A DNA stretch of 64,000 nucleotides, taken from assembly GCA_002269645.1 (NCBI GenBank), contig NIVC01000982.1, forward strand, positions 1 to 64,000. Direction: 5' to 3'. Of this stretch, positions 2,910 through 47,814 are shown one piece after another; position 1 is the first letter of the stretch, and each line of letters begins with the position of its first letter. The position numbers and the translations under genes are program-made. Source of the stretch: Macrostomum lignano (Eukaryota). The notes below the pieces were generated by a model. It saw only the letters and a program-made list of their open reading frames with translations. It was not told where the DNA came from and searched no databases.

Positions 2910-5900
2910 GGGTGCACGACAATTGACTGCCACAATTTGACTGCCACAATTTGACTGCGGTCAATTTGACTGCCGAGAAATTTGACTGCCGACAAAATGA
3001 CTGCGGACAATTTGACTGCCGAGCAATTTGACTGCCGACAAAATGACTGCCAACAATTTGACTGCGGTCAATTTGACTGCCGAGAAATTTGACTGCCGAC
3101 AAAATGACTGCGGACAATTTGACTGCCGAGAAATTTGACTGCCGACAAAATGACTGCGGACAAAATGACTGCCAACAATTTGACTGCGGTCAATTTGACT
3201 GCGGACAATTTGACTGCCGAGCAATTTGACTGCGGACAAAATGACTGCGGACAAAATGACTGCCAACAATTTGACTGCCAACAATTTGACTGCCAACAAA
3301 ATGACTGCCGACAAAATGACTGCCAACAATTTGACTGCCAACAATTTGACTGCCAACAATTTGACTGCCAACAAAATGACTGCCGACAAAATGACTGCCA
3401 ACAATTTGACTGCCGACAATATGACTGCGGCAATTTGACTGCCGACAATATGACTGCGGCAATTTGACTGCCAACAAAATGACTGCCGACAAAATGACTG
3501 CCAACAATTTGACTGCCGACAAAATGACTGCGGCAATTTGACTGCCGACAATATGACTGCGGCAATTTGACTGCCGACAATATGACTGCGGCAATTTGAC
3601 TGCCAGCAAAAAGACTGCGGCAATTTGACTGCCGAGCAATTTGACTGCCAGCAAAATGACTGCGGCAATTTGACTGCCGACAAAATGACTGCCGAGCAAT
3701 TTGACTGCCAGCGAAATGACTGCCGGAAAAATGATGCTCCCAAAGTTTAGCACTCTGTCAACCCTTTTAAGTCTATGCATGTAGTGAAATATTGTATTTA
3801 CGAGCTAGAATGATGCAGAACAGAATACATAACCTTTATACAAGCTGTAACGGCTGTTGAAACCCTCGGATTTTGAACAGTGGGAAATGGGAATTCTAAT
3901 CTTAGGAACTATTTTGCATATATTCTAAAATCTGAGTTTAAACTCAAGCAAAAACTTTTATTATTAGTTAGGAATTAGGATAGAGTTAAACATAACATAG
4001 ATTACATTCGTGGAAAATAAGGATTGGAGGCAAACTATTGATATTGTTGGCTGGGGTGCGGCGCAGAATGTCAGAAAAACTCTGGCCTCTACCTCTGCCT
4101 CTCGATCCCTATGTCCCTTGCATCCTTTGAACCTTCTATCTTTCTTCTGTTTTCTCACTTCTCTCTCGTCTCTGCTCTCTCATCTCCCCTCTCTTATCTG
4201 TCATCGACTCATCTTACTCTTATACTCGCATGTTCTCTCACCTCTCTCCTGTGTACTCTTCTCTTCCCCTCTTTCCTTTCTCCTTTCTTCCCTTTTCTTT
4301 TCTTCTCTTCTATACTCTCTCCCTCTCTTGTCTTCTCTCATCTCTCATCTCTCCTTTCATCTCTCTCATTTCTACTCTCTCATTGAGTCTCATCTCTCCT
4401 TTCATCTCCACTATCTCATCTCTACAATCTCACCTTTCCCCTGTCTTCTTTCTCAACTTCTCTCTCATCTCTCTCTCCTCTTTTGCATAACGAGAATGCG
4501 CCTAGCAAGCTTTTCAATTTCATTCGTCAATATAAAGCTGTGCACAACTAGGCTAAGCTTTTGGTTTTGGTGTTTGGGGTTGCCAACTTGGGGGTTTGGA
4601 GTCAAAAAATGAAAGTAGAGGGTGATCAGTGGAGCCCACAAGTTTAGGTGGCGAGCAAACTCATAAAACTCCATTGTGAGAGAGAGAGGGGGGGTTTAAA
4701 CTTTAAAGTGGCAAACATTGAGGGACTGGGTGAGAGAGGAGGAGGGGTGGCCTCTTGTTTTCTATATTAATTTTATGGGCTAATAAAATTTTATGGGTTC
4801 ACTAATTGTGACTTGGCATATCTGGTATGTCCTAGCATTGCCTACTAGTCTAGACTCTACTATTAAGGTGATGATTTCCACATTTAAAGGTTCTTTCTTT
4901 CTCCTATGTCATATTAATCTCATATATTGGATGGAATCTTCCAGATTTAAAAGCAATACCATAGACTCGTACTATACAATCTATTAATAGCCTAATAGAC
5001 TAATATTTAGTATATTTGGATTAATCAGTCAAAAGCTAAAGTTAATGGTAAGCTAGCTCTATAAAGAGCACTCTGCTCAACAAACCACAGCTATGTATAG
5101 ATGATCCGTTTGAACATTCGTCATAACACATGCATGTATTGCTGAAAGGCAAATGTAGCTTGCATCATTACTCGTAAAGAACGAATTTTTAGTCCTGCAT
5201 AAATATGATCAATACATATATAAAGAGGATGTACGTGTAGTATTTGAGGCAGTCATATTGCTCGGCAGTCATTTTGTTGGCAGTCATTTTGTCGGCAGTC
5301 AAATTGCCGCAGTCTTTTTGCTGGCAGTCAAATTGCCGCAGTCATATTGTCGGCAGTCAAATTGCTGCAGTCATATTGTCGGCAGTCAAATTGTTGGCAG
5401 TCATTTTGTCGGCAGTCATTTTGTTGGCAGTCAAATTGTTGGCAGTCATTTTGTCGGCAGTCATTTTGTTGGCAGTCAAATTGTCGGCAGTCAAATTGTT
5501 GGCAGTCATTTTGTCCGCAGTCATTTTGTCGGCAGTCAAATTGCTCGGCAGTCAAATTGTCCGCAGTCAAATTGTGGCAGTCAAATTGTGGCAGTCAAAT
5601 TGTCGGCAGTCAAATTGCCGCAGTCATTTTGTCGGCAGTCAAATTGTTGGCAGTCATTTTGTCGGCAGTCATTTTGTTGGCAGTCAAATTGTTGGCAGTC
5701 ATTTTGTCGGCAGTCATTTTGTTGGCAGTCAAATTGTCGGCAGTCAAATTGTTGGCAGTCATTTTGTCCGCAGTCATTTTGTCGGCAGTCAAATTGCTCG
5801 GCAGTCAAATTGTCCGCAGTCAAATTGTGGCAGTCAAATTGTGGCAGTCAAATTGTTGGCAGTCAAATTGTTGGCAGTCAAATTGTCCGCAGTCAAATTG

Positions 5901-5938
5901 TCCGCAGTCAAATTGTGGCAGTCAATTGTCGTAGACCC
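2910..5938. mobile_element. Non-autonomous Foldback/MULE-like DNA transposon with tandem-repeat TIRs
   Basis: Termini GGGTGCACGACAATTGACTGC... and ...GCAGTCAATTGTCGTAGACCC are inverted copies. Flanked by identical 9-bp CTAAAAATT (2901-2909 and 5939-5947). Arms (~2910-3722, ~5247-5938) are arrays of 15-bp AATTTGACTGCCGAC in opposite orientation. No transposase seen in the ~1.5-kb loop. Confidence 0.88.
4090..4480. repeat. CT-rich low-complexity tract inside the Foldback loop
   Basis: Almost pure pyrimidine sequence; produces S/L/F-rich spurious ORFs. Confidence 0.8.
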
Positions 5939-8060
5939 CTAAAAATTACAACCCGAACACCCCAAGGGGTTACTGCTTTTGATAGAAGGCGGACCCAATG
6001 TTCATCTTCTGATATCTTGCCTAATAGTTCTGCTGCAACTTCCAACCCATACTCGTGCACTCGTGTACTGTCAGTCTGTCACCCTTTTGTTGACAAAATC
6101 GTAAAAATAGAGATTCTACAAAGTTTGAATAGAGCCAGCCGCCGTAAGCTGTTTCTAGACGAAAAAAGCCCACTTTCAGCTTTAAAATAGGCTCGTATAA
6201 TAACAAGCGAGTCACATGAAAATACGATAATAAAAAAATATGCCCGTGTTTTTCTGCACAGTTTTGTTATTCTGCATCTTTTCTATAAAATGCCTGTTAT
6301 GCCATTCGGGGTCACGTCTAGTTCTAGTCAGGACCACAGGGCTTGGGTGAGACACTAGGTGCTCGTTTATAATCGAGTTTTGACGAGTAGTTACGGCATA
6401 AACAGCACTCAAGATTTGATAAGGACGGGAACCGCGGATTGAAAGTTTGAGAGTAATATTTACCACGATTTTCTTTCCCAGAAAACGCAGGAAATCAAAA
6501 CTTTCAAAAAGTGTTTTTTCCACGTGAGTTTGAAGATTAAGAAAGAAGCTCCACAGCTTTTTGATTTTGCTCATTGCACTGTATTTGTGCAGTTTAAATA
6601 ATAACGGGCTAGGAGAATACTCGGTACCCGGTACTCAGTCACTCACCTGCGCTGCAACTGCAATGCTGGGAATCCGCTGAATAAAAAGATCTCAATAGAA
6701 GTAATATATTATAATTTTAAGCGTATTTATTAGTACGTTAAAACTGATTCAATTTGAATAAAAAAACGCAAGCGAAGTCCAATATAAATAAATAGCGACT
6801 TTATCTGGCCGCGGAGTCCAACTGAAGATTGTAATTGGCTGCCGTAACTGCTGCAATAGGCCTCTGTAGCTATGTACACACTCTGCTGAATGTGCATGCT
6901 TTTCTAGCCCAGATAATATTACTGGCGATTTTCGCGCCCCTGGCTTTGGCAATATTAATTTCACCGAACAAAACACGAAGTGAATAACTCACGAGCTATA
7001 ATAAGAAAATCGCGCGCGTCGGCTCTTATGCGCTATCTTAGCACACCCCCCCCCCACCAAACTAAATTGCCTCTGCGCAAGAGTGAGGGTGGCGGGCGGT
7101 GTGCGGAATGACTCGAATGAGTGAGTGTACACTTTTTTAAAATTCAACCGCGGGTCAACGCAAAACGCGGCCACTAGCCAATGTGTTATTAAAGTAAGGG
7201 TTAGCAAATACCACTTTGGGAATGGAAAACCTTGTAGCTAAACTACTAAAATTGAGATCAAACAATCGCGACCGCCACTAAAAGCCTTGGCTGATTTGTT
7301 TAAAATTATTTTAATCAATAGTTTTAAATATGCACGCGCTATGTAATCTGGGAGAGTCGTATTTAAAAATGCGCTAAATTGCCCATTTGCACCAATGTAC
7401 AGCTGGCGCCCCCTCTGTACCTGTGCAAACCAATCGGCTCTGGCGCTGAAAGGTACAACCACTAGGCCTCGTCCCTTAGACTCTTTCCGCCTCTGGATGG
7501 TGCGGTAGCTGACGTTGCGACCAAGATCCCATTACCTATAGACTCCGGGCCCGGGTTGTTTGAAGGTACACGCCAGAGGTGCGGCCGCCACCAGTCACCT
7601 GTGCAAGAGTATACACCCGGTAAAATCTCCCACTAACGAGACGGAACTCCCGGTCTGCAACAGTTCTTGACCCCACCTGTAACCTGTACTAGAAAGGGCC
7701 GATTAATGGGCTCTATGCGAGGCTTACAAGGACAGTCCAGTCAGTGCTGGAAACGATTCGACTTTTGCATGGGGGATCTTTGAGCTGGTGAGCAGTTTTA
7801 GACTACGATTCCCTCCTAAGCCCCGGGATTCCAAGTGTGGATAATAGATAACGCCATATTAATATCTTTCCTCCTAGATGGGTTCGATGCAGCAGGAGAT
7901 GGGGAAGTGCAGGTCTCTGAGCTCAGAGCTGCACATCCTATGGGGACTTATTTAGAAGTATTGTTATACTGCTATGATCATTTGGTTAAATTCGGTTCAT
8001 ACTCGGTGATCTTCCACTCTGATCCTCAGCTTCTAGTCCATGCACTGCGACACGCGCACT

Positions 8061-11000
8061 ACTACGTATCGCGCCAAATCTGCAGGGTTTTCAGATGTTT
8101 TGACGCAAAAAACGCAAATTATACTACTATCTGAAAATGAAGTAAGTAGTATACAAAAACGCTATCCTAAGCGTGATATGGCAATATGTAGTCGTAATAA
8201 TCCATGTGCTCATATATGTACATTAATTCCATGTACATTAATCCCTAAATATCTCAAATTGGATATGTACATTAATCCCATGTACATTAATCCCTATCTA
8301 TCTCAAATTGGATATGTACATTAATTCCATGTACATTAATCCCTATCTCAAATGTCCATGTCTATCCCCAATTCTATATGTACACTCACATTAATCTACA
8401 GTGTCATCCCCAGACGGCCCGCGCGCGCACCAAAATTACAACTCGAAACCCTACTACATGTACAATCTCATCCAAATGAGTCAACATTCAAGTTTTACAA
8501 ACCACGTTATATACATATTCCTATTTATATGTCAATTATTCAAAACCTACATGTAGCTGATTACACTACTACCTTTAGTAGAGTTACAAATCAAGATTCT
8601 ATTGAAAAAGACTGTATTCATATAGTTTTCACATTGAAAAGCGTATATTTTCATTTCAATAATTGAAAAAGAGAGCAAAAACAGTAAGGAGACAACAGCA
8701 AGTTGAGACTTAATTATAGCCTGTACTACCAAACCCTCCTGCACCGCGAATTGAGCGGCTGCTGGAAGCAACCTCCTCATCGCCATTCCCTCTAGTATAT
8801 CCTCACCCCTCGAAGCCCCTATACTGAATGTTGAATCACCCTTTAACTCGGACCATAGTCAAATTCAACCCTGTTCGAAAACAGCCACCCCTCCGATGTT
8901 TACCAGACACAGCGCAGACCCCATAACAAATCGAGCTAAATTTTAACACTCGCCCCTGTTCTCTCTGTCCCCCCCCTTCTAAATGCCAAGGAATTTCGAC
9001 CCTCTCTCCATTTTCAGTGTACAGACAGATCTTTCCTCAGCACAGACCATATATTAAACTTCAAAACCCCTCTCTTCTCCGATTACGTCATCCATGCCGC
9101 CCCAGTTAGCAAGAAACCAACTTTTAATGCACACATCAACCCCCGCGAGCAAATCCGAGTCCGCCAACCTCTACCTGCATTGACAAACCCCAGCTGCATT
9201 TGTAAATGTACACAGCCTATGAATCAGTGTCTCCACCGCATGCAATTCTGATTTACTTGATTCTAAACTTTGTAAATTGTATAAGTCACCCTTGCGTTAT
9301 ACTAGAAGTAGTGAAGTCCACATATTTAAATACGTGAGGCTATTCAATTCTGCCTCTCCGCATCCCCTACCTTCTCACTTCAAGCTTTCAGACTTGGTCT
9401 TTGAGACGGTCGGTTTAATCTGTTAGAAGCAGGAATGAATCATGCACTGACCTCTCCATACAAAGTAAAGTTGGAATTTCAGACAAGAAATTTGGTTATT
9501 TTAAAAGCTAAATGACTAGAAAAGCACATTTTTTTCATTAAAATGCAGCTTTTACAGTTTTTTTACGATTTTAACCTTAAAATGCAGACTTTGTTGATCA
9601 AAATCAGTAGTTTCATCACTAGAAACCATACTTTCAACAGCTAATTTGTCCAAATGTCGCTTTCAACTTGACCTTAGACTGCTTTTAAGCAGGAATGAAC
9701 CCCACACAAACATCCACAAGCCAGCCCAAAATCATCCAAAGACATGGCTATTGAAGCCTAAATTGCTAGAAATGCGCATTTTTTTCATAAGAAAATACAA
9801 ATTTTCACAGTTTTTATGCATTTTTTACGTTAAAATGCAGACTTTATTGATCAAAATCAGTAGTTTCATCACTAGAAACCATACTTTCAGCAACTAATTT
9901 GTCCAAATATCGCTTTCAACTTGACCTTAGACAGCTTTTAAGCAGGAATGAACCCCCCACGAACATACACAAGCTAGCCCAAAATCATCCAAAGACGGCT
10001 GTTGAAGACTAAATTGCTAGAAATGAGCATTTTTTCATAAGAAAACACAAATTTTCACAGTTTTTACGCATTTTTTTCGTTAAAATGCAGACTTTATTGA
10101 TCAAAATCAGTAGTTTCATCACTAGAAACCATACTTTCAGCAACTAATTTGTCCAAATATCGCTTTCAACTTGACCTGTTGAAGTTGACCAATTTTAACA
10201 CAAAATTATCACAAATGCTACTTCTGGAACTCTGAGACAGCTTTGAGCAGGAATTATAACCGCACACGGATTACCCGAGCCAGTCCAATATTCCACTGAA
10301 GCCAGGGTTTTTTAAAGCTGAATTGTTAGAATTGCTCATTCTTTCGTTTAATAAATGACAATTTTCACAGTTTTATTATTTTCTAACGTTAAAATGCGAA
10401 ATGTATTGGTCAAACTTAGTAGTTTCATCCCAAAAAGCCATAATTTCAACCGCTAATTTGTCCAAATGCTGATTTCAAAGTTGGCAAGAGACAGCTTTCG
10501 AGCAGGAATGAGTCACACACTGATCTCCATATGCACACCCCGGCCCAAGTTGGAATTCCACCCAAGACATTTTCATTGAAAGCTAAATTACTAGAAATTG
10601 CACATTTTCGTTTTAAAAAGGTCAATTTTCACAGTTTTTACTCTTTTTAACGTTAAAATGCTGACTTTATTGAACAAAATTAATCACTTCATCAGCAGAA
10701 ACCATAATTTTTACAACTTAATGCTGTTTCATCATTCAAATGTATGTATTTTGTACGTGTAATACCCCTCAAGAAGTCAGGGAAGGGATTATTCTTGAAT
10801 ATTGGGTTAAAACGTACAGTTTGCTATAAACCTAGCTATAATAATTTTAACATATACAGTAGGCGAAGCGGCCCGTTGATTTCGATTGACATTTAAACTG
10901 TCCCTCCCAGACCTCTCTCTCTCTCTCCTTCTGCACCCACCGAGAAAAGTGACTCATGCGGCAATCAGTTTGACAGGTTTAGTATATTACTGAATTGGCA

Positions 11001-12276
11001 AAACAGCCAACACACAATGTTCATTAGACTCGTCTTCACAGCACAGACCCATGTAGAACAGAACCACTCGTCCCTGTCTCTCTGACCTTACCATTTCTAA
11101 CTGTCAAGGAATTCCGACCCTCCCTCTCCAGTTTCAGTGTACAAACAGATATTTTCACAGCACAGACTCATATATTGAGCCTCCTCCAACCAAAACCCTA
11201 TCTTGATTACGTCATCCACCTCCCCCATAGAAGCAGTTAGCAAGAAACAAAATTTTTCGATGCACATATGAACACTGTGAACCATGCAAAATAGCACATC
11301 TACGGGTCGATTTTGATTGACAATTTAATACCTTTTGTTGATGCTGCTGTGTACAGTAGTCTTATTTCCGAAGCCCTAGCAGTCATCTTTTAGATGTGGT
11401 GAATCAGTGTTGTTTTTGCCAACTTTACATCTTGATTCATCCTCCAAATTCTTCAACTCTGACCATATTCAATAATTTAACCCATGCAAGTAGATTTGCC
11501 AATTCGCCAAATTAGCCAATACGAATGGGGCCAGAGGACCCACCCAAATCGAGCCCTTGTCTCTCTCAGGCCTCTCTCTCCTACACATACCCCAGAAAAG
11601 TGACTCATGAGGCAATCAGTTTAACAGGTTCAGTATACTGAATTGGCAAAACAGTAAACACCCAATGGTCAATGGACTCGTCTTCGCAGCACAGACCATT
11701 TTGAATAAAGCCAAAACACACATACACCCCTATTCTCTGACCAAACCTTTCCATTTCTAGTTGTCAACGAAATTCGACCGGCCTCTCTCTCAATCCCAAT
11801 GTACATTTTGACGAAGCAAGCAGATCTTTTCACAGCACGGACCCAGCCTCCCCCAACCAAAGCCCTATCTCTGATTACGCCATCTATACATCCCCATAGA
11901 AGCAGTTAGCAAGAAAAAAATTTCGATGCGCATATATGAACAATGCGAACCAAGCAAATCCGCGCGTCTACCAAAGCCAACCCTACCCTGCGTGCTGTAA
12001 TTGCATTTGTCAATGTACACACCCTATGAATCAGTGTCTCCTTCTTTGGAACACACGAATGCATTAGTCAGAAAGTTTGGATGCAATTAAAAACTCTCTC
12101 GATGCTTTGCGTATAAACGAGTAATCGATTGAATCAATTGTACACTTGACACATTTAATTACGTGCTGCCATGCAACGGAAAGACAGGATAATGGGGTGG
12201 GTGGTCACGCAGCCTCATTCTCTCTTTCCTACTGATTTTTCATTATCTATCAATCTCAGCTCTTTCCGGGGCAACT
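8061..12276 (+). repeat. Left arm of giant inverted repeat, with internal sub-repeats
   Basis: Contains ATGTACATTAAT short repeats (~8200-8350), about five ~250-300-bp modules (AGCAGGAAT at ~9428, 9687, 9941, 10245, 10500) and three diverged modules (~8900-9240, 11040-11300, 11680-12040). Confidence 0.9.
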
Positions 12277-12916
12277 TACTTTACATTAGTAGTAGGCAGT
12301 AGAGACAGGGACTGTGCTGCGCACAGTCACGGTCCGGCCACCCTCCGCCCGCTGCCGCCGCCTCTCAATGAATGTAAAATAGGAGTGTTAGTTCATGTAT
12401 TAATGCTCCTTGACCTGCAAAAATTATACGGTTGCTAGGCAGTGTCGTAACACAGGACATGCGTTTTTCTGTAAAGTAATAATAACCCCACCATTAATAT
12501 AGACAGTTGGTCGTGTAAACGAATGATTTGAAAGTTTAGTCTATGTTTTACAAAATGTCTCTATGAAAACTCATCTTCCTACTGACAGTAGAGTTTGCAA
12601 AAATCAGTTCTTTGAATAATGCGACATTTTCGTGAAAATATTTAAACTGCTATATTGGGCCTATGGCAGATTTTTATTGAGAAACTATCGTCATTTCCAC
12701 AGAGAAAGATAAACATGTGAAGCTTTCGTGAAGATTTCATCTTCATACTACGGGTGTCAAATTTTCCTGTATTTGACTGAACGTACGTGCATTTAGTCAT
12801 AGTCGGGGGAGTGCTTCAACCATTTCTCAGGTTTAAATCGGCTGCCGCTTGCATATGTACATCACATGTAAATGAACATGTGGTAAATCTGATGAGGAAC
12901 TATGCACAAATGCGCG

Positions 12917-15900
12917 AGTTGCCCCGGAAAGAGCTGAGATTGATAGATAATGAAAAATCAGTAGGAAAGAGAGAATGAGGCTGCGTGACCACCCACCCCA
13001 TTATCCTGTCTTTCCGTTGCATGGCAGCACGTAATTAAATGTGTCAAGTGTACAATTGATTCAATCGATTACTCGTTTATACGCAAAGCATCGAGAGAGT
13101 TTTTAATTGCATCCAAACTTTCTGACTAATGCATTCGTGTGTTCCAAAGAAGGAGACACTGATTCATAGGGTGTGTACATTGACAAATGCAATTACAGCA
13201 CGCAGGGTAGGGTTGGCTTTGGTAGACGCGCGGATTTGCTTGGTTCGCATTGTTCATATATGCGCATCGAAATTTTTTTCTTGCTAACTGCTTCTATGGG
13301 GATGTATAGATGGCGTAATCAGAGATAGGGCTTTGGTTGGGGGAGGCTGGGTCCGTGCTGTGAAAAGATCTGCTTGCTTCGTCAAAATGTACATTGGGAT
13401 TGAGAGAGAGGCCGGTCGAATTTCGTTGACAACTAGAAATGGAAAGGTTTGGTCAGAGAATAGGGGTGTATGTGTGTTTTGGCTTTATTCAAAATGGTCT
13501 GTGCTGCGAAGACGAGTCCATTGACCATTGGGTGTTTACTGTTTTGCCAATTCAGTATACTGAACCTGTTAAACTGATTGCCTCATGAGTCACTTTTCTG
13601 GGGTATGTGTAGGAGAGAGAGGCCTGAGAGAGACAAGGGCTCGATTTGGGTGGGTCCTCTGGCCCCATTCGTATTGGCTAATTTGGCGAATTGGCAAATC
13701 TACTTGCATGGGTTAAATTATTGAATATGGTCAGAGTTGAAGAATTTGGAGGATGAATCAAGATGTAAAGTTGGCAAAAACAACACTGATTCACCACATC
13801 TAAAAGATGACTGCTAGGGCTTCGGAAATAAGACTACTGTACACAGCAGCATCAACAAAAGGTATTAAATTGTCAATCAAAATCGACCCGTAGATGTGCT
13901 ATTTTGCATGGTTCACAGTGTTCATATGTGCATCGAAAAATTTTGTTTCTTGCTAACTGCTTCTATGGGGGAGGTGGATGACGTAATCAAGATAGGGTTT
14001 TGGTTGGAGGAGGCTCAATATATGAGTCTGTGCTGTGAAAATATCTGTTTGTACACTGAAACTGGAGAGGGAGGGTCGGAATTCCTTGACAGTTAGAAAT
14101 GGTAAGGTCAGAGAGACAGGGACGAGTGGTTCTGTTCTACATGGGTCTGTGCTGTGAAGACGAGTCTAATGAACATTGTGTGTTGGCTGTTTTGCCAATT
14201 CAGTAATATACTAAACCTGTCAAACTGATTGCCGCATGAGTCACTTTTCTCGGTGGGTGCAGAAGGAGAGAGAGAGAGAGGTCTGGGAGGGACAGTTTAA
14301 ATGTCAATCGAAATCAACGGGCCGCTTCGCCTACTGTATATGTTAAAATTATTATAGCTAGGTTTATAGCAAACTGTACGTTTTAACCCAATATTCAAGA
14401 ATAATCCCTTCCCTGACTTCTTGAGGGGTATTACACGTACAAAATACATACATTTGAATGATGAAACAGCATTAAGTTGTAAAAATTATGGTTTCTGCTG
14501 ATGAAGTGATTAATTTTGTTCAATAAAGTCAGCATTTTAACGTTAAAAAGAGTAAAAACTGTGAAAATTGACCTTTTTAAAACGAAAATGTGCAATTTCT
14601 AGTAATTTAGCTTTCAATGAAAATGTCTTGGGTGGAATTCCAACTTGGGCCGGGGTGTGCATATGGAGATCAGTGTGTGACTCATTCCTGCTCGAAAGCT
14701 GTCTCTTGCCAACTTTGAAATCAGCATTTGGACAAATTAGCGGTTGAAATTATGGCTTTTTGGGATGAAACTACTAAGTTTGACCAATACATTTCGCATT
14801 TTAACGTTAGAAAATAATAAAACTGTGAAAATTGTCATTTATTAAACGAAAGAATGAGCAATTCTAACAATTCAGCTTTAAAAAACCCTGGCTTCAGTGG
14901 AATATTGGACTGGCTCGGGTAATCCGTGTGCGTTATAATTCCTGCTCAAAGCTGTCTCAGAGTTCCAGAAGTAGCATTTGTGATAATTTTGTGTTAAAAT
15001 TGGTCAACTTCAACAGGTCAAGTTGAAAGCGATATTTGGACAAATTAGTTGCTGAAAGTATGGTTTCTAGTGATGAAACTACTGATTTTGATCAATAAAG
15101 TCTGCATTTTAACGAAAAAAATGCGTAAAAACTGTGAAAATTTGTGTTTTCTTATGAAAAAATGCTCATTTCTAGCAATTTAGTCTTCAACAGCCGTCTT
15201 TGGATGATTTTGGGCTAGCTTGTGTATGTTCGTGGGGGGTTCATTCCTGCTTAAAAGCTGTCTAAGGTCAAGTTGAAAGCGATATTTGGACAAATTAGTT
15301 GCTGAAAGTATGGTTTCTAGTGATGAAACTACTGATTTTGATCAATAAAGTCTGCATTTTAACGTAAAAAATGCATAAAAACTGTGAAAATTTGTATTTT
15401 CTTATGAAAAAAATGCGCATTTCTAGCAATTTAGGCTTCAATAGCCATGTCTTTGGATGATTTTGGGCTGGCTTGTGGATGTTTGTGTGGGGTTCATTCC
15501 TGCTTAAAAGCAGTCTAAGGTCAAGTTGAAAGCGACATTTGGACAAATTAGCTGTTGAAAGTATGGTTTCTAGTGATGAAACTACTGATTTTGATCAACA
15601 AAGTCTGCATTTTAAGGTTAAAATCGTAAAAAAACTGTAAAAGCTGCATTTTAATGAAAAAAATGTGCTTTTCTAGTCATTTAGCTTTTAAAATAACCAA
15701 ATTTCTTGTCTGAAATTCCAACTTTACTTTGTATGGAGAGGTCAGTGCATGATTCATTCCTGCTTCTAACAGATTAAACCGACCGTCTCAAAGACCAAGT
15801 CTGAAAGCTTGAAGTGAGAAGGTAGGGGATGCGGAGAGGCAGAATTGAATAGCCTCACGTATTTAAATATGTGGACTTCACTACTTCTAGTATAACGCAA

Positions 15901-17131
15901 GGGTGACTTATACAATTTACAAAGTTTAGAATCAAGTAAATCAGAATTGCATGCGGTGGAGACACTGATTCATAGGCTGTGTACATTTACAAATGCAGCT
16001 GGGGTTTGTCAATGCAGGTAGAGGTTGGCGGACTCGGATTTGCTCGCGGGGGTTGATGTGTGCATTAAAAGTTGGTTTCTTGCTAACTGGGGCGGCATGG
16101 ATGACGTAATCGGAGAAGAGAGGGGTTTTGAAGTTTAATATATGGTCTGTGCTGAGGAAAGATCTGTCTGTACACTGAAAATGGAGAGAGGGTCGAAATT
16201 CCTTGGCATTTAGAAGGGGGGGACAGAGAGAACAGGGGCGAGTGTTAAAATTTAGCTCGATTTGTTATGGGGTCTGCGCTGTGTCTGGTAAACATCGGAG
16301 GGGTGGCTGTTTTCGAACAGGGTTGAATTTGACTATGGTCCGAGTTAAAGGGTGATTCAACATTCAGTATAGGGGCTTCGAGGGGTGAGGATATACTAGA
16401 GGGAATGGCGATGAGGAGGTTGCTTCCAGCAGCCGCTCAATTCGCGGTGCAGGAGGGTTTGGTAGTACAGGCTATAATTAAGTCTCAACTTGCTGTTGTC
16501 TCCTTACTGTTTTTGCTCTCTTTTTCAATTATTGAAATGAAAATATACGCTTTTTCAATGTGAAAACTATATGAATACAGTCTTTTTCAATAGAATCTTG
16601 ATTTGTAACTCTACTAAAGGTAGTAGTGTAATCAGCTACATGTAGGTTTTGAATAATTGACATATAAATAGGAATATGTATATAACGTGGTTTGTAAAAC
16701 TTGAATGTTGACTCATTTGGATGAGATTGTACATGTAGTAGGGTTTCGAGTTGTAATTTTGGTGCGCGCGCGGGCCGTCTGGGGATGACACTGTAGATTA
16801 ATGTGAGTGTACATATAGAATTGGGGATAGACATGGACATTTGAGATAGGGATTAATGTACATGGAATTAATGTACATATCCAATTTGAGATAGATAGGG
16901 ATTAATGTACATGGGATTAATGTACATATCCAATTTGAGATATTTAGGGATTAATGTACATGGAATTAATGTACATATATGAGCACATGGATTATTACGA
17001 CTACATATTGCCATATCACGCTTAGGATAGCGTTTTTGTATACTACTTACTTCATTTTCAGATAGTAGTATAATTTGCGTTTTTTGCGTCAAAACATCTG
17101 AAAACCCTGCAGATTTGGCGCGATACGTAGT
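12917..17131 (-). repeat. Right arm of giant inverted repeat
   Basis: Reverse complement of left arm; the only differences noticed are three single-base homopolymer-length changes (not exhaustively aligned). Confidence 0.9.
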
Positions 17132-17637
17132 CGCACTCACTACTCACATTTCAGGTCACGTCTCATATTAAATAAATAAACAGACAGAAACAAACGAGTT
17201 GAATTATAGCTAATGCTCTGAAATACTGGCCCTAAACCTGGCCTTAACCTCTCGGTTAATTATTAAAACGGAATTAGTAAGTTAAGATTGATAAACTAGG
17301 AGATGCAGATGATCAAGGGGGGACCGGGGCTGACTATACCCAACGCCAGCCCAGCGCAACAGATAAAGAAATACCTTACAGACGCGACCGACGGGCAGGG
17401 CTGCTTGGCGCGGTGGTCGTCGGGTAGTCACGGCGGGCGGTTGCAGTCACGGACGATTAGTCCAGACGAGGCGCGTCGGGAGGTTAAAGCCAAGGGAAGT
17501 TACAGCTCAGCACGGTGGTTACAGCTCAGCGCCGAAAAGGGTGAAGGGGCTCCAAACGGTTTTTGCAGCTCCAAAGTGTCCGTACAGAAGGGGAAGAGGA
17601 AGGAAGCGGGAAGAGGGAAATGCTTGCCCCTTTGAGC

Positions 17638-17961
17638 TCAAAACAGCTCCCATGGAACGGTAGGCAGTCCAGGCAAGCCCGGCACGCAGAGCACGACGGT
17701 CTTCTGCGTGTTGACCACCAGGCCGACGCTCGCCACAACGCTTAACAGCCGGTCCAGCTGGCGCTATGCTCCCTCGACGGTCAAGAACAGCAGGGCGAGA
17801 TCGTCGGCGTAGCCATGCAAGCACGCTGAGACGCCTCTTCGGTTGGCGTCGACCCACGCGTCGCTACAGCAGGAAGCCGTCGTCTTTAGAAGGGAGAGCA
17901 TCACCCAGTCAAGCACCAGAACGAACAGGAACGGCGCAGGCGTGACGACCTGCTGGATCCC
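17638..17961 (-). pseudogene. Degenerate non-LTR retrotransposon reverse transcriptase fragment
   Basis: One minus-strand frame reads GIQQVVTPAPFLFVLVLDWVML...GYADDLALL...GA*RQLDRLL...GLVVNTQKT, i.e. RT motifs B', C (YADD at 17811-17800) and D. In-frame TAG at 17766-17764. Confidence 0.85.
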
Positions 17962-18628
17962 GTTTGCCGCTGCAGGTAGACAGCCGCCTGCTCAGACAGC
18001 ATAAAATTTTATATAAAATGAGAAAATTTAGGCAGCCGCAACTTACTATACAGTATTCACTGTTAATAATACCCTCGAACTATACGATATACGCACTGAA
18101 CTATATACGCAAGTAACAATTGATGTAAGAACTCAAAACACAAATTAAAACAATAAAAATCCTGCCTTACATGCGTGCCTCAAAAGCATCAATCGAATTA
18201 TCATATTTTGAATACACCATGTATACGAGCTACTTCGATAGATTGCGAGCTCGTATAAAATTGTATCTAGAGCACAAAATATATTCTGTGATCTAGAGCC
18301 CGATGAAACAGTGTTCGATGCCAAAAAAGCAACATAAAATTGACGCAAAACGAAGCAAAAATAATAGATCGACTTATCGAGTCAGTCGAATTAATTAGTA
18401 AAATTTTAAATAGACATACTTTTCAGAAAAAATAACTAGCTATAACAAACGCATAGATTGACAAGTGCTTGACTAAAGTGAAGAGAAACAAAAAAATTGG
18501 ACAAATTATGGCTGTCCAACTTTCGGGAATTTTTTCTCCTTCGGAGCAAATGACTGCATGCATTGTTCACCCCGGACGAAAAGTCAATGCGAATTGATTG
18601 TAACACATGGCGAGTATACATGTACGAT

Positions 18629-19323
18629 TGACTAACTTGAATTAGCTGCGGGGGCTCCGTGCCTCCGGAAACAGCAAGGAGGCGTTGCCGCCCATTTCGC
18701 TAACCCCTGGTGACCACGGGCAGCTGGTGCTGCGGTGTAGCGCAGGGAGTTCCGGTGGTGCCGGTGTCTGCAGCGCGGTCCCCCTCCGGAGAGTCCAGGA
18801 GGTGGATTGTCGCTCGCCCGGTAGCCCTTAGGTAGCGGACGAGCTGGCAGAGATTCTCGGGCCTGAAAACGTCGGAGAGGTCCGGGTTTGGGCCGTGGTA
18901 GGTGAGCCTGACCTGAGTAAAGGCGGGCATTCACAGATAAAGTGCTCCGCATTCTCGACACCGGAGAGGCAGAATGGGCAATCCTCGCTGCGCATTTTTC
19001 CCTGGAGGTGACGATGCCTGGCAAAACAGCCATGACCCGAGAGGGCCATGGTCACCGCCCTGATGTCCCTGCGGTTGAGTCCAAGCAGGGCCCTGCGCAG
19101 GGCGGAGGAAGCTAGACAGGGGGCAGCCGCGCGCGGGATTGTCGGCAGTCGAGGGCGTTAGCCCACCTCTCCCTGTGCTTAGAAGCCACCGTTACTCACT
19201 GGTTGATCCGAGTGGTGACAACGGCGATGGGGGTGGGGGCCACGGGCAGGGGACCAGTAAAAGAACCGGTCGAGCCAGCCTTGGCCAGGCGATCGGCCAT
19301 GCAGCTCGTTGCCGGGGTGGCCC
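18629..19323 (-). mobile_element. 5'-truncated LINE (RNase H tail plus C-terminal CCHC zinc knuckle; I/R1/LOA-like group)
   Basis: Minus strand reads GHPGNE/ADRLAKAGS (RNase H end), then ALSGHGCF...[25 protein letters not shown] with frameshifts. Flanked by 15-bp direct repeat GTATACATGTACGAT (18614-18628, 19324-19338). Confidence 0.85.
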
Positions 19324-20548
19324 GTATACATGTACGATATATATATGGCTTGCAAAAGCCAATTGATAATGTATTTAATAGGTCGGATATTTAAAGAAAA
19401 ACAACATGTAAATGGTGACACGTACATGTACATGTTGCAAATGAGGAATTCAATATGTATTGTTCATACTCGTACATATGTACATTACAGTATTACACAG
19501 TTGCATGGTCCTGGTTTTGGAGTTGATCTAATTTTCAAGTCCACCTTGTAGAAGAAGAAGAAGCCATCCGCATATGAAGAATTCGCAGATGAATAATTAG
19601 ACCACCCCTGCTATGCTGCACCACACCCTCTCTCTTGTCAAGCGAGTGAACACCTTTTTGTGTTCGATTTCAACAAAACTCACATTCTATTTCGGCAAGC
19701 TGATCATTTTCATCATTCTATTCACAGCTACCTCAACATTCGAATTCGGCAAGGACCAGTCAATTTCAGTAATCACCATTGAATGCAATATCAATAATCA
19801 CAAGCTATTCAGAGCGCATTTTGGTGATCTTACAATAAAATAATTCATTTTAATTGTACATTGTAATTAAATACAATAATTAATTCTTAATTATTATTTT
19901 ATTGGTGACAGTTTGACTTAACATGATTACATCCCCAGTAGCATTTTGTAACTTTGTTATATTGCTTGTTTGTTTTAATAGTACAATGTATACAAATTTA
20001 AAGTTACACTTTCGTAGAAAATAAGTCTTCGTGTGTTTTTCAATGAACCATGAACGCTTACGCAGGCCTACGGCTTATGCTACAAATGAAAGTCTAAGAC
20101 AATAAACAATTAGTGCAAGTACTAGGATTATTAAATACTGACTTATAAAAATGAAACGCGAATTTTTGCAGAAAAAAGTAGTCTAAAGGATAATATATTA
20201 GCTTATTTACCATCTTTTTTAGAGTTTCTCTATTGTTTTCTACTTTCCAAAACCCTTAGGCCTTACTCCATACGACCATAGCATAGTATTCTTTTTACTA
20301 TGAACTGAAGCATCATTAGTATTCTTTTTTTGGTAACTGATGCTGACAATTTGCACCCGTGAACCAAGGACTGAGTTTATGATTACCAATCAGAATGAAT
20401 TTTCTCACTTTCATTCCCTGGTTTAAAATAGTCAACTCAAAAGTCAAAGTTAACATTATGATCTGCTTTTCAATTTTCATAAAAAACAATAACTGAGCCA
20501 AAGTCACTTGTTATAGCTAATGTTATATTAAAGTGATTGCAAAAATCA

Positions 20549-40524
<19,976 letters not shown>

Positions 40525-40937
40525 ATTCTCATTTAATAAAAATCTTCGCTTATTTTATAATAAACTCTTGCATTCCTACTGATAGTAGCAACTCAGCTCT
40601 TCAGTAGTATCGGTGGCTTATTCATGTTAAAGTGCATCAATATGCAATACTTTAATGGATAGTTCAATTTCAAAATTTGTCTGCAATATGACTTCATCAG
40701 CAGTTGTGCAATAATTTTATTGTGTGATCAGAAATTACACAGCTTTGATCATATTTTTTGCTTTCCTTTTTTCAACATAGTCAAGCATTATTTTTTGTAT
40801 GATCTAATTTAGGGCATCTTTTTACACTACTACTATTACTATATAGTGTATATTACGAGCTATTTTGTGCAATGTAGAGTTTCTAGAATGTGGCTTTTTA
40901 TTGTAATTTTGTCTATCAAATATTTGTACTGGAGGTG

Positions 40938-41779
40938 GGAGTCATTAGCTCACTGAAGGGAATTGGGGCTGTGGGTCATTAGCTCACTGAGAGGAATTGG
41001 GGCTGTGGGTCATTAGCTCACTGAGGGGAATTAAGGCTGTGGGTCATTAGCTCACTGAGGGGAATTGGGGCTGTGGGTCATTAGCTCACTGAGAGGAATT
41101 GGGGCTGTGGGTCATTAGCTCACTGAGGGGAATTGGGGCTGTGGGTCATTAGCTCACTGAGGGGAATTGGGGCTGTGGGTCATTAGCTCACTGAGGGGAA
41201 TTGGGGCTGTGGGTCATTAGCTCACTGAGGGGAATTGGGGCTGTGGGTCATTAGCTCACTGAGGGGAATTGGGGCTGTGGGTCATTAGCTCACTGAGGGG
41301 AATTGGGGCTGTGGGTCATTAGCTCACTGAGGGGAATTGGGGCTGTGGGTCATTAGCTCACTGAGGGGAATTGGGGCTGTGGGTCATTAGCTCACTGAGG
41401 GGAATTGGGGCTGTGGGTCATTAGCTCACTGAGGGGAATTGGGGCTGTGGGTCATTAGCTCACTGAGGGGAATTGGGGCTGTGGGTCATTAGCTCACTGA
41501 GGGGAATTGGGGCTGTGGGTCATTAGCTCACTGAGGGGAATTGGGGCTGTGGGTCATTAGCTCACTGAGGGGAATTGGGGCTGTGGGTCATTAGCTCACT
41601 GAGGGGAATTGGGGCTGTGGGTCATTAGCTCACTGAGGGGAATTGGGGCTGTGGGTCATTAGCTCACTGAGGGGAATTGGGGCTGTGGGTCATTAGCTCA
41701 CTGAGGGGAATTGGGGCTGTGGGTCATTAGCTCACTGAGGGGAATTGGGGCTGTGGGTCATTAGCTCACTGAGGGGAAT
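40938..41779. repeat. Minisatellite, 34-bp unit GGGTCATTAGCTCACTGAGGGGAATTGGGGCTGT
   Basis: About 24 highly homogeneous units downstream of the GIT stop codon. Confidence 0.95.
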
Positions 41780-42454
41780 TGTTACAGTGAATTTGTTGCA
41801 CCATTTTTAATTGCTTTTTCTTGAGAGTGATTTTGCTAAACGCTGAAGTATTACTGTTGTATATTCAGTCAAGTCGGTGACTTGCTGCCAATAGAGAAAA
41901 ATGTAATTCTCAAAAAAATGGATGAGAATCTCTCTGATTGGATTGCATGATTTTTCTACAAATTTTATCACAATTCTGAGTGAGTTTCCCTTATAACTAT
42001 TTTTCTTACATATTAGTTAAAATAAATGGTTTTTTTGCACTGCTGCAATAATGAACCCGAATTATGATATTCTGTGATATTATCGTTATTATTCATACTT
42101 AATTTTTATTGTTAATTGCTTAAAATATTATCTAATCGCTCTGATACGAGTGTATTGGCATTATAAATATGATTTATTATTTGCTTTTGCAGATCAGTTT
42201 ATTATCGAGTAAATTCGAGCTATTGTGTTATGAGTTCATCTTTAGATGCTTGTGCAGCAAATATACTGAATATTGCTGATGCTCCTTATACACAATATTC
42301 AGAATGTCCTTTACTGCTTCATTTTTATGCTTCTACTTTAACTTCAATAGGAACTTAACATTGTATTAGGCCTAATGTTAGATCACTGCAAAGCATTCTA
42401 TAATTTTTTTGGATTTTTTTCTTGCCAGTTATCTTTTTGTCTTAGTGTCCTCCT

Positions 42455-42975
<521 letters not shown>

Positions 42976-43021
42976 CCATCTGTCAGTCAGCCTCACTGCT
43001 CCAACCCTCAGCTAACCAGTC

Positions 43022-46000: not shown

Positions 46001-47030
46001 TGTCCACCTGTCAGAGTAGTTTCTACCTGTCAGAGTAGTGTCTACTTGTCAGAGTAGTTTCTACCTGTCAGAGTAGTGTCTACCCGTCAGTAGTGTCTAC
46101 CTGTCAGAGTAGTGTCTACCTGTCAGAGTAGTTTCTACCTGTCAGAGTAGTGTCTACCTGTCAGAGTAGTGTCTACCCGTCAGAGTAGTTTCTACCTGTC
46201 AGAGTAGTTTCTACCTGTCAGAGTAGTGTCTACCTGTCAGAGTAGTGTCTACCCGTCAGAGTAGTTTCTACCTGTCAGAGTAGTGTCCACCCGTCAGAGT
46301 AGTGTCTACCCATCAGAGTAGTGTCTACCTGTCAGAGTAGCATCTACCTGTCAGAGTAGTGTCTACCTGTCAGAGTAGCATCTACCTGTCAGAGTAGTGT
46401 CTACCTGTCAGAGTAGCATCTACCTGTCAGAGTAGTTTCTACCTGTCAGAGTAGTGTCTACTTGTCAGAGTAGTTTCTACCTGTCAGAGTAGTGTCCACC
46501 TGTCAGAGTAGTGTCTACCTGTCAGAGTAGTGTCTACCCGTCAGTAGTGTCTACCTGTCAGAGTAGTGTCTACCTGTCAGAGTAGTTTCTACCTGTCAGA
46601 GTAGTGTCTAGATCCGCAGAATGGCTTCAATGCTAGCTTTCGAGGGCCACCCTCTGAGGCCCAGAGAGTGTACATGTCTGACGGTGGACTGTTGGCTTGA
46701 TTAGCCGTTAAAGTGCAGAATAACAAACTTAGCTAACTAATAACTATAAATCTCAGGTACCCGAGTCGGGAGTTTCAGCTGCCCTGGCTGCGCAACTACC
46801 TGCAGTACAGGGACGGCTTCCTTGGCGGTGGCGGAGCGGACTCGCTGGACTCTCGAGTTGAGCAGCTCTACAGGGAGGTGACCAAGTTTTCTCTGGCCTC
46901 GCATCTGCTCTGGGCCCTGTGGGCCCTGGTGCAGGCCAGGCACTCCACCATCGATTTCGACTTTCTGGACTACGCCATCAGCCGCTACGGCGAGTATAAG
47001 GCTAAGAAGGCTGAGCGGCTGGCGTGCTGA
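43022..47030 (+). CDS. ETNK: Ethanolamine kinase (choline/ethanolamine kinase family), 364 aa
   Basis: join(43022-43396, 45306-45751, 46757-47030), GT-AG, phases 0 and 2. [20 protein letters not shown], Brenner-type [41 protein letters not shown]...IDFDFLDYA. Confidence 0.95.
43535..45270. repeat. Intronic minisatellite, 22-bp unit CTGTCATAAAACTGTCAGAAAG (dimer of 11-bp CTGTCA-N5)
   Basis: Fills ETNK intron 1. Confidence 0.94.
45808..46610. repeat. Intronic minisatellite, 19-bp unit CAGAGTAGTGTCTACCTGT
   Basis: Fills ETNK intron 2. Confidence 0.95.
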
Positions 47031-47285: not shown

Positions 47286-47814
47286 TCAAATCTGTCAGTT
47301 AAGGTTTGGTTTTTGAGTTTTTGCCAACTCCAATTCAAACTGCCAGCTTTATTTCCTGTTAGGCTTAGATATTATTGACAATTGACAATTATGATTAATT
47401 TAATTGATTGGTGCAGCCTTGATATTTTTGCATGGTAATTACCTAGACTTTGAAATGAGTTTAATTAAATTAATTTATTATTGTTATTACTAATCCACAC
47501 AGTCGCATCATTTCCTTGCAATCTTACTCGATCTGTGCCTTGCTAAACTCTTGTCTTCTATGCTACTTACTGGCTGCCCTTTGTTAGTAGTGTGAGACCG
47601 AAATCTTATATGTTGAATGTTTATAATTCTTTAATCAAGCTAATAGAATTTTTTCTCAAATTTGAACTGTCCGAAGAGCTGGAAAAATTCATCTTTTTTA
47701 TTGCCTAAATTTATTTCATTGCCATCCGTCGATAAAAGCATCGAACTTGCTGTTTCTTGAGTTCTTTTTTTAGCTGCATGCAGATTCTCTGTATTGGCAG
47801 TGTTGAGACTCTAC

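What the first reader, a model, noticed from the sequence alone, without database searches (positions are those of the whole stretch)
8061..17131. 9-kb near-perfect palindromic element with 4.2-kb TIRs and an exact 6-bp TSD
Seen: 93% of the element is terminal inverted repeat (arms 8061-12276 and 12917-17131, spacer 640 bp). The termini are 5'-ACTACGTATC...GATACGTAGT-3', and CGCACT is duplicated flush against both ends. No transposase, integrase or polymerase is recognisable. Established: a 6-bp TSD with long TIRs is typical of Polinton/Maverick elements (DDE integrase), but those normally start with AG and have TIRs of hundreds of bp; Foldback/MULE elements give about 9-bp TSDs and CACTA elements 2-3 bp. 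Inference: this could be an undescribed non-autonomous, foldback-shaped mobile element mobilised in trans by a 6-bp-cutting integrase. The ACT-ACG terminus has the period-3 reiteration seen at protein-primed replication origins (AGTAGT in Polintons, CATCAT in adenovirus).
Basis: partly seen in the sequence, partly recalled or inferred. Interest (0 to 1): 0.88.

Follow-up and report, generated by a model that had tools for sequence, protein, structure and literature searches.

The report
Giant non-coding foldback transposon insertion
A 9-kb stretch of an invertebrate genome is a gene-less mobile-element insertion made almost entirely of two identical 4.2-kb mirror-image arms; it is a known kind of "foldback" transposon, but unusually large and perfect and with an atypical 6-bp insertion footprint.

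Summary
Arms 8061-12276 and 12917-17131 are reverse complements with 0 substitutions and three 1-nt homopolymer-length differences. A 640-bp asymmetric spacer separates them, and CGCACT lies flush on both sides (chance about 4e-4).

The element has no ORF above 108 codons. It gives no Pfam hit in six frames, no Rfam hit, no protein-database hit, and no relative in the window or in the viral, metagenome, phage or plasmid collections.

Each arm has the domain plan of foldback transposons such as Tetris and Galileo:
- a unique end;
- subterminal 15/49-bp repeats;
- a roughly 253-bp tandem array;
- an inner domain, next to a non-coding middle.

The best reading is a non-autonomous foldback-type DNA transposon. 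It would have been inserted as one unit by an enzyme supplied in trans that makes 6-bp staggered cuts, with its arms made or kept identical by copy-back synthesis or arm-to-arm conversion.

The superfamily is unresolved. The termini (AC...GT) fit neither Polinton/Maverick nor IS3EU. The "ACT-ACG" resemblance to Maverick ends is imperfect and on the opposite strand polarity.

The host genome is absent from all searchable collections. Copy number, empty site and autonomous partner therefore remain untested. Interest is moderate: a new variant of a known kind.

The parts
8055..8060 (.). Left copy of the 6-bp target-site duplication, CGCACT
   Evidence: chance of a flush 6/6 repeat about 4e-4
8061..12276 (+). 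Left arm (TIR), 4216 nt. It is G-poor on the strand read from the terminus towards the centre (A .315, C .244, G .147, T .294).
8061..8213 (+). Unique terminal domain beginning ACTACGTATCGCGCC. It contains a 9-bp-stem hairpin at about 8120-8153.
8214..8348 (+). Subterminal repeats: a 49-bp unit x2.8, built from six copies of the 15-bp motif ATGTACATTAATYCC (each with the 8-bp palindrome ATGTACAT). Candidate protein-binding sites (inference). Mirror copy at 16844-16978.
8947..9234 (+). Outermost copy of a dispersed 200-400-bp unit. Other copies lie at 10919-11303 and 11572-12041 (74-95% identity).
9428..10718 (+). Array of about five ~253-bp tandem repeats. Neighbouring copies are 92% identical; outer copies are about 70% identical. 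Mirror copy at about 14474-15764.
10719..12276 (+). Inner domain of the arm, containing two of the dispersed units. It ends sharply at the spacer.
12277..12916 (.). Asymmetric, non-coding middle domain (spacer), 640 bp. It has no strand skew and no residual palindromy.
12917..17131 (-). Right arm (TIR), 4215 nt. It is the reverse complement of the left arm, with 0 substitutions and three 1-nt run-length differences.
17132..17137 (.). Right copy of the 6-bp target-site duplication, CGCACT

Best explanation
The region 8061-17131 is one insertion of a non-autonomous, entirely non-coding, foldback-type class II (TIR) element in an intergenic region of an invertebrate genome. It lies about 3.4 kb upstream of a GIT-like ArfGAP gene.

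Shown:
- exact termini and a flush 6-bp duplication of the target;
- two identical 4.2-kb arms around a 640-bp asymmetric middle;
- the arm layout: unique end, subterminal 15/49-bp repeats, ~253-bp tandem array, inner domain;
- no coding capacity;
- a composition distinct from both flanks.

Inferred:
- The whole unit was joined to the chromosome by a DDE-type transposase or integrase supplied in trans. This enzyme makes 6-bp staggered cuts and recognises the identical ends, probably also the subterminal ATGTACATTAATYCC repeats.
- The perfect arms with sharp inner boundaries arose when one end of a more ordinary element was copied back onto the other side. This could be fold-back or template-switch synthesis running out to the very terminus, either before integration or in place. 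Alternatively, the arms are kept identical by arm-to-arm gene conversion.
- The internal repeats are old (70-92% identity) whereas the arms are identical, so the arm duplication or homogenisation is much younger than the arm sequence.

The superfamily is unresolved. Likely consequences are also inference: a long hairpin transcript that could feed small-RNA pathways if transcribed, and a fragile, recombinogenic site.
For: Structure and identity of the arms.

Exact ends and TSD. Empirical chance of a flush 6-mer repeat: 4e-4.

The arms are not stand-alone elements. The inner ends show no TIR with the outer ends (score 15 against a shuffle maximum of 22). The hypothetical per-arm TSDs do not match (CGCACT/TACTTT and TGCGCG/CGCACT). 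The unit was therefore inserted as a whole.

Compositional discontinuity: the arms have 14.7% G on the inward-reading strand, against 21-27% in the flanks and spacer.

Non-coding status: Pfam, 0 hits in six frames; Rfam, 0; no protein among 5.8e9.

The domain plan matches published foldback elements:
- Tetris has a flanking domain, ~220-bp tandem repeats, an inner domain and a non-coding middle. No autonomous copy of Tetris is known.
- In Galileo the longest TIRs occur in non-autonomous copies. They grow by tandem-repeat expansion and by recruiting internal sequence. Its subterminal repeats carry secondary transposase-binding sites.

A second, older foldback-like structure lies 2 kb away (2916-5933), which shows that this genome hosts such elements.

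Sharp arm/spacer boundary.
Against: - Only one copy is available. No second copy, fragment or related terminus exists in the other 55 kb of the window or in any collection searched. Membership of a repeated, mobile family is therefore not demonstrated.
- The TSD rests on 6 bp.
- The termini AC...GT match none of the 6-bp-TSD groups for which the tools hold end signatures. IS3EU/GingerRoot has TA..TA, rarely TG..CA. Vertebrate Mavericks have (AGT)2//(ACT)2 or (AG)3//(CT)3.
- Published foldback elements give 7-10-bp TSDs and have imperfect arms (for example 95% in Galileo).
- Zero substitutions in 4.2 kb is unusual for a transposed TIR element and needs the extra copy-back or conversion step, which is inferred and not shown.
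Confidence: 0.6

Rival explanations
1. The element is a defective 'copy-back' derivative of a Polinton/Maverick-like, protein-primed linear element. One long non-coding end was copied back during strand-displacement replication. This gave a nearly all-TIR molecule, which the family's retroviral-type integrase then inserted with its characteristic 6-bp TSD.
For: - A 6-bp TSD is the Polinton/Maverick hallmark.
- Identical TIRs running exactly to the terminal nucleotide are what terminal copy-back or panhandle repair would give (established knowledge of protein-primed replicons; inference here).
- The first six bases, ACTACG, share 5 of 6 letters with the (ACT)2 end motif of vertebrate Mavericks.
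Against: - The motif is on the wrong end and strand. Mavericks read 5'-(AGT)2...(ACT)2-3', whereas this element reads 5'-ACTACG...CGTAGT-3'.
- The reiteration is imperfect.
- No trace of pPolB, integrase, capsid, protease or ATPase appears in six-frame Pfam at E<=1.
- The TIR is 4216 bp, against 46-1447 bp in intact vertebrate Mavericks. The element is 9.1 kb, against 12.7-24.6 kb.
- The arm looks like foldback-transposon TIR domains rather than decayed genes.
- No Polinton genes are present elsewhere in the window.
Confidence: 0.12
2. This is a local inverted duplication made by replication template switching or fold-back repair of a chromosomal break, without any transposition. One arm and the spacer would be ancestral host sequence, and the CGCACT repeat would be a coincidence.
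For: - The arms are perfectly identical and have sharp inner boundaries.
- This is the only copy in the window.
- Palindromes with asymmetric centres are the known product of such repair (established knowledge).
Against: - This reading needs a flush 6/6 direct repeat by chance (4e-4).
- There is no microhomology that would explain the outer right junction. The continuation of the copied strand would read AGTGCG, whereas the flank reads CGCACT.
- Both arms, not just one, differ in composition from their flanks.
- The outer 300 bp has the unique-end-plus-subterminal-repeat layout of a transposon terminus.
Confidence: 0.1
3. The palindrome is an assembly, amplification or chimeric-read artefact, for example an inverted chimera from whole-genome amplification or a template-complement read.
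For: - The arms differ only by three homopolymer-length errors. This is the signature of error-prone long reads, and such data sets contain inverted chimeras.
- The source reads cannot be inspected here.
Against: - An inverted chimera continues into the reverse complement of the left flank. Here the right arm stops at exactly the mirror of the left end and continues into unrelated unique sequence.
- A flush 6-bp duplication and a 640-bp unique centre are present. A chimera would need two independent, precisely placed switches to produce them.
- The different run-length errors in the two arms show they were built from separate consensus sequences rather than copied.
Confidence: 0.07
4. The structure is a composite of two separate head-to-head insertions of one 4.2-kb element, flanking 640 bp of host DNA.
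For: The two units are identical and in inverted orientation.
Against: - Neither arm has its own TSD (CGCACT/TACTTT and TGCGCG/CGCACT).
- Neither arm has inverted-repeat ends of its own.
- Only the two outer flanks match.
Confidence: 0.02

Closest known systems
Tetris (foldback transposon of Drosophila virilis; PMC4079207)
   Same: - It has long TIRs built from an outer unique flanking domain, a block of ~220-bp tandem repeats and an inner domain. The repeats here are ~253 bp.
- It has a non-coding middle domain.
- No ORFs and no autonomous partner are known.
- Only a few structurally complete copies exist.
   Different: - Tetris TIRs reach 1,735 bp; here they are 4,216 bp.
- The Tetris TSD is 8-10 bp (assigned to Mutator); here it is 6 bp.
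- There is no sequence similarity between the two.
- The arms here are identical.
Galileo (P superfamily, Drosophila; PMC3573991)
   Same: - It looks like a foldback element.
- Its TIRs are lengthened by internal tandem repeats and by recruitment of internal sequence.
- Its longest TIRs occur in non-autonomous copies.
- Its subterminal repeats act as secondary binding sites.
   Different: - The TSD is 7 bp.
- TIRs reach at most about 1.26 kb, with about 95% arm identity.
- Transposase-bearing copies are known.
Polinton/Maverick elements (PMC8097293, PMC8969392)
   Same: Both have a 6-bp TSD and long TIRs. There is a trinucleotide-like reiteration at the very end.
   Different: - Mavericks encode pPolB, integrase and capsid genes; this element encodes nothing.
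- Maverick TIRs are 46-1447 bp and the elements 12.7-24.6 kb.
- The end motifs 5'-(AGT)2//(ACT)2-3' or (AG)3//(CT)3 differ in polarity and sequence from 5'-ACTACG//CGTAGT-3'.
IS3EU/GingerRoot DNA transposons (PMC10045372)
   Same: The TSD is usually 6 bp, and these are cut-and-paste TIR elements.
   Different: - Their termini are TA..TA, occasionally TG..CA; here they are AC..GT.
- No transposase is present here.
- Long TIRs are not described for them in that paper.
Large genomic palindromes maintained by arm-to-arm gene conversion (for example sex-chromosome palindromes; from general knowledge, not tested here)
   Same: The arms are near-identical around a unique spacer. This offers a way to keep arms identical without recent origin.
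   Different: Those palindromes are not insertions, have no TSD or transposon-like termini, and are usually much larger.

Membership tests
Foldback-type TIR transposons (structural class: FB, Tetris, Galileo-like) | Very long TIRs making up most of the element, with a short non-coding middle | tested here: met
   92.9% of the 9071 bp is TIR, with a 640-bp middle
Foldback-type TIR transposons (structural class: FB, Tetris, Galileo-like) | TIRs internally repetitive (subterminal short repeats and/or ~200-bp tandem repeats) | tested here: met
   15/49-bp repeats at 8214-8348; ~253-bp x5 array at 9428-10718; compare Tetris and Galileo
Foldback-type TIR transposons (structural class: FB, Tetris, Galileo-like) | Flanking TSD of fixed length across multiple dispersed copies | tested here: inconclusive
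   There is one copy with a perfect 6-bp TSD. No other copy could be retrieved.
Mutator-related Foldback elements (Tetris, Tm1, FB) | TSD of 8-10 bp | tested here: not met
   The TSD is 6 bp, and the repeat cannot be extended. Tetris has 8-10 bp.
Galileo / P superfamily | 7-bp TSD | tested here: not met
   6 bp here; 7 bp in Galileo
Polinton/Maverick | 6-bp TSD | tested here: met
   CGCACT on both sides; family value
Polinton/Maverick | Encodes protein-primed PolB and a retroviral-type integrase (plus capsid, protease and ATPase) | tested here: not met
   Six-frame Pfam gives 0 hits at E<=1, and no ORF exceeds 108 codons. A non-autonomous derivative is not excluded.
Polinton/Maverick | End motifs 5'-(AGT)2//(ACT)2-3' or 5'-(AG)3//(CT)3-3' (vertebrate members) | tested here: not met
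   The ends are 5'-ACTACG//CGTAGT-3'. This is opposite polarity, with 5 of 6 letters matching. Invertebrate members were not available for comparison.
Polinton/Maverick | TIRs of tens to about 1.4 kb in 12-25-kb elements | tested here: not met
   4.2-kb TIRs in a 9.1-kb element
IS3EU/GingerRoot | 6-bp TSD | tested here: met
   family value
IS3EU/GingerRoot | Termini TA..TA (occasionally TG..CA) | tested here: not met
   The termini are AC..GT, and no shift of the boundary gives TA..TA
LTR retrotransposon / solo LTR (3-6-bp TSD) | Direct LTRs, TG..CA ends | tested here: not met
   The repeats are inverted, the ends are AC..GT, and there is no RT or integrase
Other 6-bp-capable superfamilies (Dada, hAT subgroups) | Terminal 11-nt match to a classified family with the same TSD length (Repbase rule, PMC4455052) | not testable with these tools
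   No Repbase or Dfam library is available. The target is not a small-RNA gene (Rfam gives 0 hits).

The most novel reading that the evidence does not exclude
The element founds, or is the first sighted member of, an undescribed group of trans-mobilised, all-TIR elements with AC...GT ends and 6-bp TSDs. In the boldest form, it is a copy-back defective derivative of a protein-primed, integrase-using (Polinton-like) element whose identical arms are regenerated at each replication cycle.
Probability: 0.15. Interest if true: 0.7.

Novelty: new variant of a known kind. Interest (0 to 1): 0.4.

Why it matters
If the element belongs to a family of dispersed copies, it would extend the foldback architecture to an enzyme class that makes 6-bp staggered cuts. 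The foldback architecture is so far tied mainly to Mutator (8-10-bp TSD) and P (7-bp TSD) transposases. The 4.2-kb arms are also more than twice as long as those of the foldback elements read here, Tetris and Galileo.

The perfect identity and sharp inner boundaries of the arms would make it a clean natural example of how foldback elements are generated, whether by copy-back of one end or by arm-to-arm conversion.

For the host, a 4.2-kb perfect inverted repeat 3.4 kb upstream of a GIT-like gene is a potential source of hairpin RNA and a potential fragile or recombinogenic site.

If it is a single local event or an artefact, it has little wider meaning.

Tried and rejected
Searches for relatives, all empty:
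- Terminal 24-27-mer and subterminal 30-mer against viral contigs and JGI metagenome contigs.
- Arm plus spacer against the phage and plasmid collections by blastn.
- Translated terminal 1.2 kb against 5.8e9 proteins.
- blastn of the element against the rest of the window.
- 15-mer terminus with up to 3 mismatches: one extra hit, at chance level.

Host identification:
- A sphingolipid desaturase exon finds at best 56-65% identity (ostracod, molluscs, nemertean, hemichordate). The species and its close relatives are therefore not in the protein collection.
- For this reason look-ups of exact ORFs could not retrieve other copies.

Coding and RNA content: Pfam in six frames and Rfam at gathering and E<=1 thresholds found nothing, and tRNA search found none.

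Readings rejected:
- Two independent head-to-head insertions.
- A degenerate extension of the palindrome into the spacer.
- Alternative TSD or boundary placements such as 9 bp or TA..TA ends (by inspection).
- Paralogous empty sites in the window: the flanks are unique.

Folding of the terminal 300 nt and of the spacer showed only small local hairpins.


Full report
**1.

The repeat finder splits the palindrome into four blocks of 100% complementarity that abut one another. A global alignment of 8061-12276 against the reverse complement of 12917-17131 shows 0 substitutions. It shows three single-base length differences, all in short runs: A4/A5, C8/C7 and CC/C. Three indels with no substitution is the pattern of long-read consensus error rather than divergence, so the arms are best taken as identical.

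The 640-bp centre (12277-12916) is truly asymmetric. Its two halves are no more complementary than shuffled sequence, so identity falls from 100% to nothing at a sharp boundary.

The outer ends are equally sharp. The bases just outside the arms are not complementary, and CGCACT abuts both ends. Sliding the same geometry across the whole window gives a flush 6/6 direct repeat at 22 of 54,911 positions, or 4e-4.

**2. What the element contains**

Nothing recognisable is encoded:
- The longest stop-to-stop frame is 108 codons.
- Six-frame translation of one arm plus the spacer gives no Pfam family at E<=1.
- Rfam gives nothing at gathering or at E<=1, and there are no tRNAs.
- The translated terminal 1.2 kb has no relative among 5.8 billion proteins.

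The arm has a clear domain plan:
- a unique 150-bp end, 8061-8213;
- a subterminal block, 8214-8348, of a 49-bp unit built from six copies of ATGTACATTAATYCC;
- a complex stretch holding one copy of a 200-400-bp unit, 8947-9234;
- about five ~253-bp tandem repeats, 9428-10718, with neighbours 92% identical and outer copies about 70% identical;
- an inner domain with two more copies of the dispersed unit, 10919-11303 and 11572-12041.

The whole arm is G-poor on the strand read from the end inwards (14.7% G against 24.4% C). The spacer and both flanks are unskewed. The element is therefore compositionally foreign to its surroundings on both sides.

The internal repeats are old while the arms are identical. 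Whatever made or homogenised the arms is much younger than the arm sequence itself.

**3. Surroundings**

The window comes from an invertebrate animal. It carries the following genes:
- a sphingolipid delta-4 desaturase exon at 55775-56581, minus strand;
- choline/ethanolamine kinase exons at 43.0-47.0 kb;
- a RING-finger exon at 49.0-49.7 kb;
- a GIT-like ArfGAP gene on the plus strand, with a first coding exon near 20.5 kb, an ArfGAP exon near 22.3 kb, an ankyrin exon at 24.35 kb and an SHD exon at 32.0-32.3 kb.

The best desaturase matches are only 56-65% identical and come from several phyla. The species and its close relatives are therefore missing from the searchable protein collection.

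The element sits about 3.4 kb upstream of the GIT-like start codon. To its right lie fragments of a dispersed repeat that looks like the 3' part of a LINE. Two metagenome contigs align to 18628-19190 at about 69% identity and stop at the same boundary. The immediate flanks are unique in the window.

**4. How it most likely got there and works**

A flush 6-bp duplication around a unit with exact inverted ends is the footprint of strand transfer into a 6-bp staggered cut. The arms are not separate elements. Their inner ends share nothing with the outer ends, and neither arm has its own duplication. The 9-kb unit was therefore inserted whole, or an ordinary element was inserted and then remodelled in place. 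With no coding capacity, the enzyme must come from elsewhere.

The subterminal 15-bp repeats are the obvious candidates for binding sites. This follows the analogy of Galileo, whose subterminal tandem repeats hold secondary transposase-binding sites.

Perfect identity out to the last nucleotide, together with sharp inner boundaries, is best explained by copy-back. In this model one end of a parent element served as template for the other side, by fold-back or template-switch synthesis running to the end of the molecule, or by repair primed from the opposite TIR. Continuing arm-to-arm gene conversion is the alternative. These steps are inference.

I put the probability that this is a true integration event at about 0.8. 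I put the specific reading 'non-autonomous foldback-type class II element of unresolved superfamily' at 0.6.

**5. Rivals**

Polinton/Maverick-derived copy-back genome (0.12):
- The 6-bp TSD fits.
- No gene remnant is present.
- The TIR is three times the vertebrate maximum, and the element is shorter than any intact Maverick.
- The end motif is not the family's. Vertebrate Mavericks read 5'-(AGT)2...(ACT)2-3', whereas this element reads 5'-ACTACG...CGTAGT-3'.

Local inverted duplication without transposition (0.10):
- It needs the 4e-4 coincidence.
- It offers no microhomology at the right outer junction.
- It does not explain why both arms differ in composition from their flanks.

Assembly or amplification artefact (0.07):
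- An inverted chimera would run on into the reverse complement of the left flank.
- Here the sequence leaves the palindrome at exactly the mirror point, enters unique DNA, and carries a duplication and a 640-bp unique centre.
- The reads cannot be inspected here.

Two head-to-head insertions (0.02) is contradicted.

**6. Comparison with what is known**

*What it works like.* It resembles foldback transposons.
- Tetris has the same three-domain TIR with ~220-bp tandem repeats. It has a non-coding middle, no ORFs and no known autonomous partner.
- Galileo shows how TIRs lengthen in non-autonomous copies.

*Membership.*
- The Mutator-type foldbacks (8-10-bp TSD) and Galileo/P (7 bp) are excluded by TSD length.
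- Polinton/Maverick and IS3EU/GingerRoot share the 6-bp TSD but fail on end signatures. Polinton also fails on gene content and dimensions.
- Other groups that can give 6-bp TSDs could not be tested, because no repeat library is available.

The element is therefore an unclassified foldback-type element. It is a new variant of a known kind, notable for its 4.2-kb identical arms and 6-bp TSD.

**7. Limits**

Everything about family size, other TSDs, the empty site, an autonomous partner and read support remains open. No collection available here holds this genome. The descriptive analyses that would settle it are listed under decisive next steps. A functional test of mobility is not proposed.

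**8. Verdict**

| Item | Verdict |
|---|---|
| Observation | confirmed |
| Novelty | new variant of a known kind |
| Interest | 0.4 |
| Most novel reading not excluded | new 6-bp-TSD all-TIR group, possibly a copy-back derivative of a Polinton-like element |
| Probability of that reading | about 0.15 |
| Interest if that reading is true | 0.7 |

Noticed in passing
window 2916-5933: A second, older foldback-like structure. Inverted arrays of a 15-bp unit (CGACAATTTGACTGC, about 53 copies at 2917-3709; its complement, about 46 copies at 5248-5931; 81-85% matches) lie around a 1.5-kb CT-rich middle. Both ends start ACGACAATTGACTGCC. An 11-bp direct repeat CCCTAAAAATT lies a few bases outside each end (2899-2909 and 5938-5948). 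This would fit a 9-11-bp TSD with degenerate tips. It has no sequence relation to the main element.
   Followed up: partly
whole window, e.g. 820-2119, 22436-23191, 24500-25408, 27060-30400, 38417-39812, 40794-41909, 42432-43014, 45691-46540, 47643-48780, 58000-58900: The window has an extraordinary density of minisatellites. There are at least 20 arrays with periods of 8-43 bp, many 0.5-1.5 kb long and 90-99% homogeneous, including some inside introns of the GIT-like and choline-kinase genes. They create long spurious ORFs in several frames.
   Followed up: no
window 35525-35914 and 53863-54455: Arrays of a 28-bp unit lie in inverted orientation 18 kb apart (90-96% complementary). They bracket the choline-kinase and RING-finger genes. 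They could be two copies of one repeat family, or a very large inverted structure.
   Followed up: no
window 17300-17990 and 18628-19330 (minus strand); loci L001, L002: GC-rich fragments of a dispersed, LINE-like repeat lie just right of the element. They have no Pfam hit and no intact frame. Two short metagenome contigs (JGI 3300038379, ENA ERZ27271284) align at about 69% identity and end at the same 3' boundary (18628). Related eukaryotic DNA is therefore present in environmental data sets.
   Followed up: partly
window 8061-12276 vs 12277-12916: A strong, uniform strand asymmetry runs along the whole arm: G 12-15% in every 500-bp block on the inward-reading strand. It stops at the spacer. 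The G-rich strand therefore runs 5'->3' from the centre to both ends. The cause is unknown; it may be the nature of the repeat units, a transcription-related bias, or the polarity of a former linear replicon.
   Followed up: partly
window 8636-8641, 8962-8970, 10259-10261 and their mirror positions: The only arm-to-arm differences are run-length differences of one base. This suggests the assembly derives from error-prone long reads with residual homopolymer errors. It is worth remembering when reading frames elsewhere in this assembly.
   Followed up: no
window 20540-36000 (plus strand): A GIT-like ArfGAP gene has widely spaced small exons: start near 20.5 kb, ArfGAP near 22.3 kb, ankyrin at 24.35 kb and SHD at 32.0-32.3 kb. 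Its introns are filled with minisatellites. The foldback element lies about 3.4 kb upstream of its start codon.
   Followed up: partly
window 9083, 11207 (TTACGTCA); 10950, 11601 (TGACTCA): Each copy of the dispersed 200-400-bp unit inside the arm carries CRE-like and AP-1-like motifs at conserved positions. This may reflect promoter- or enhancer-like ancestry of that unit, or chance.
   Followed up: no
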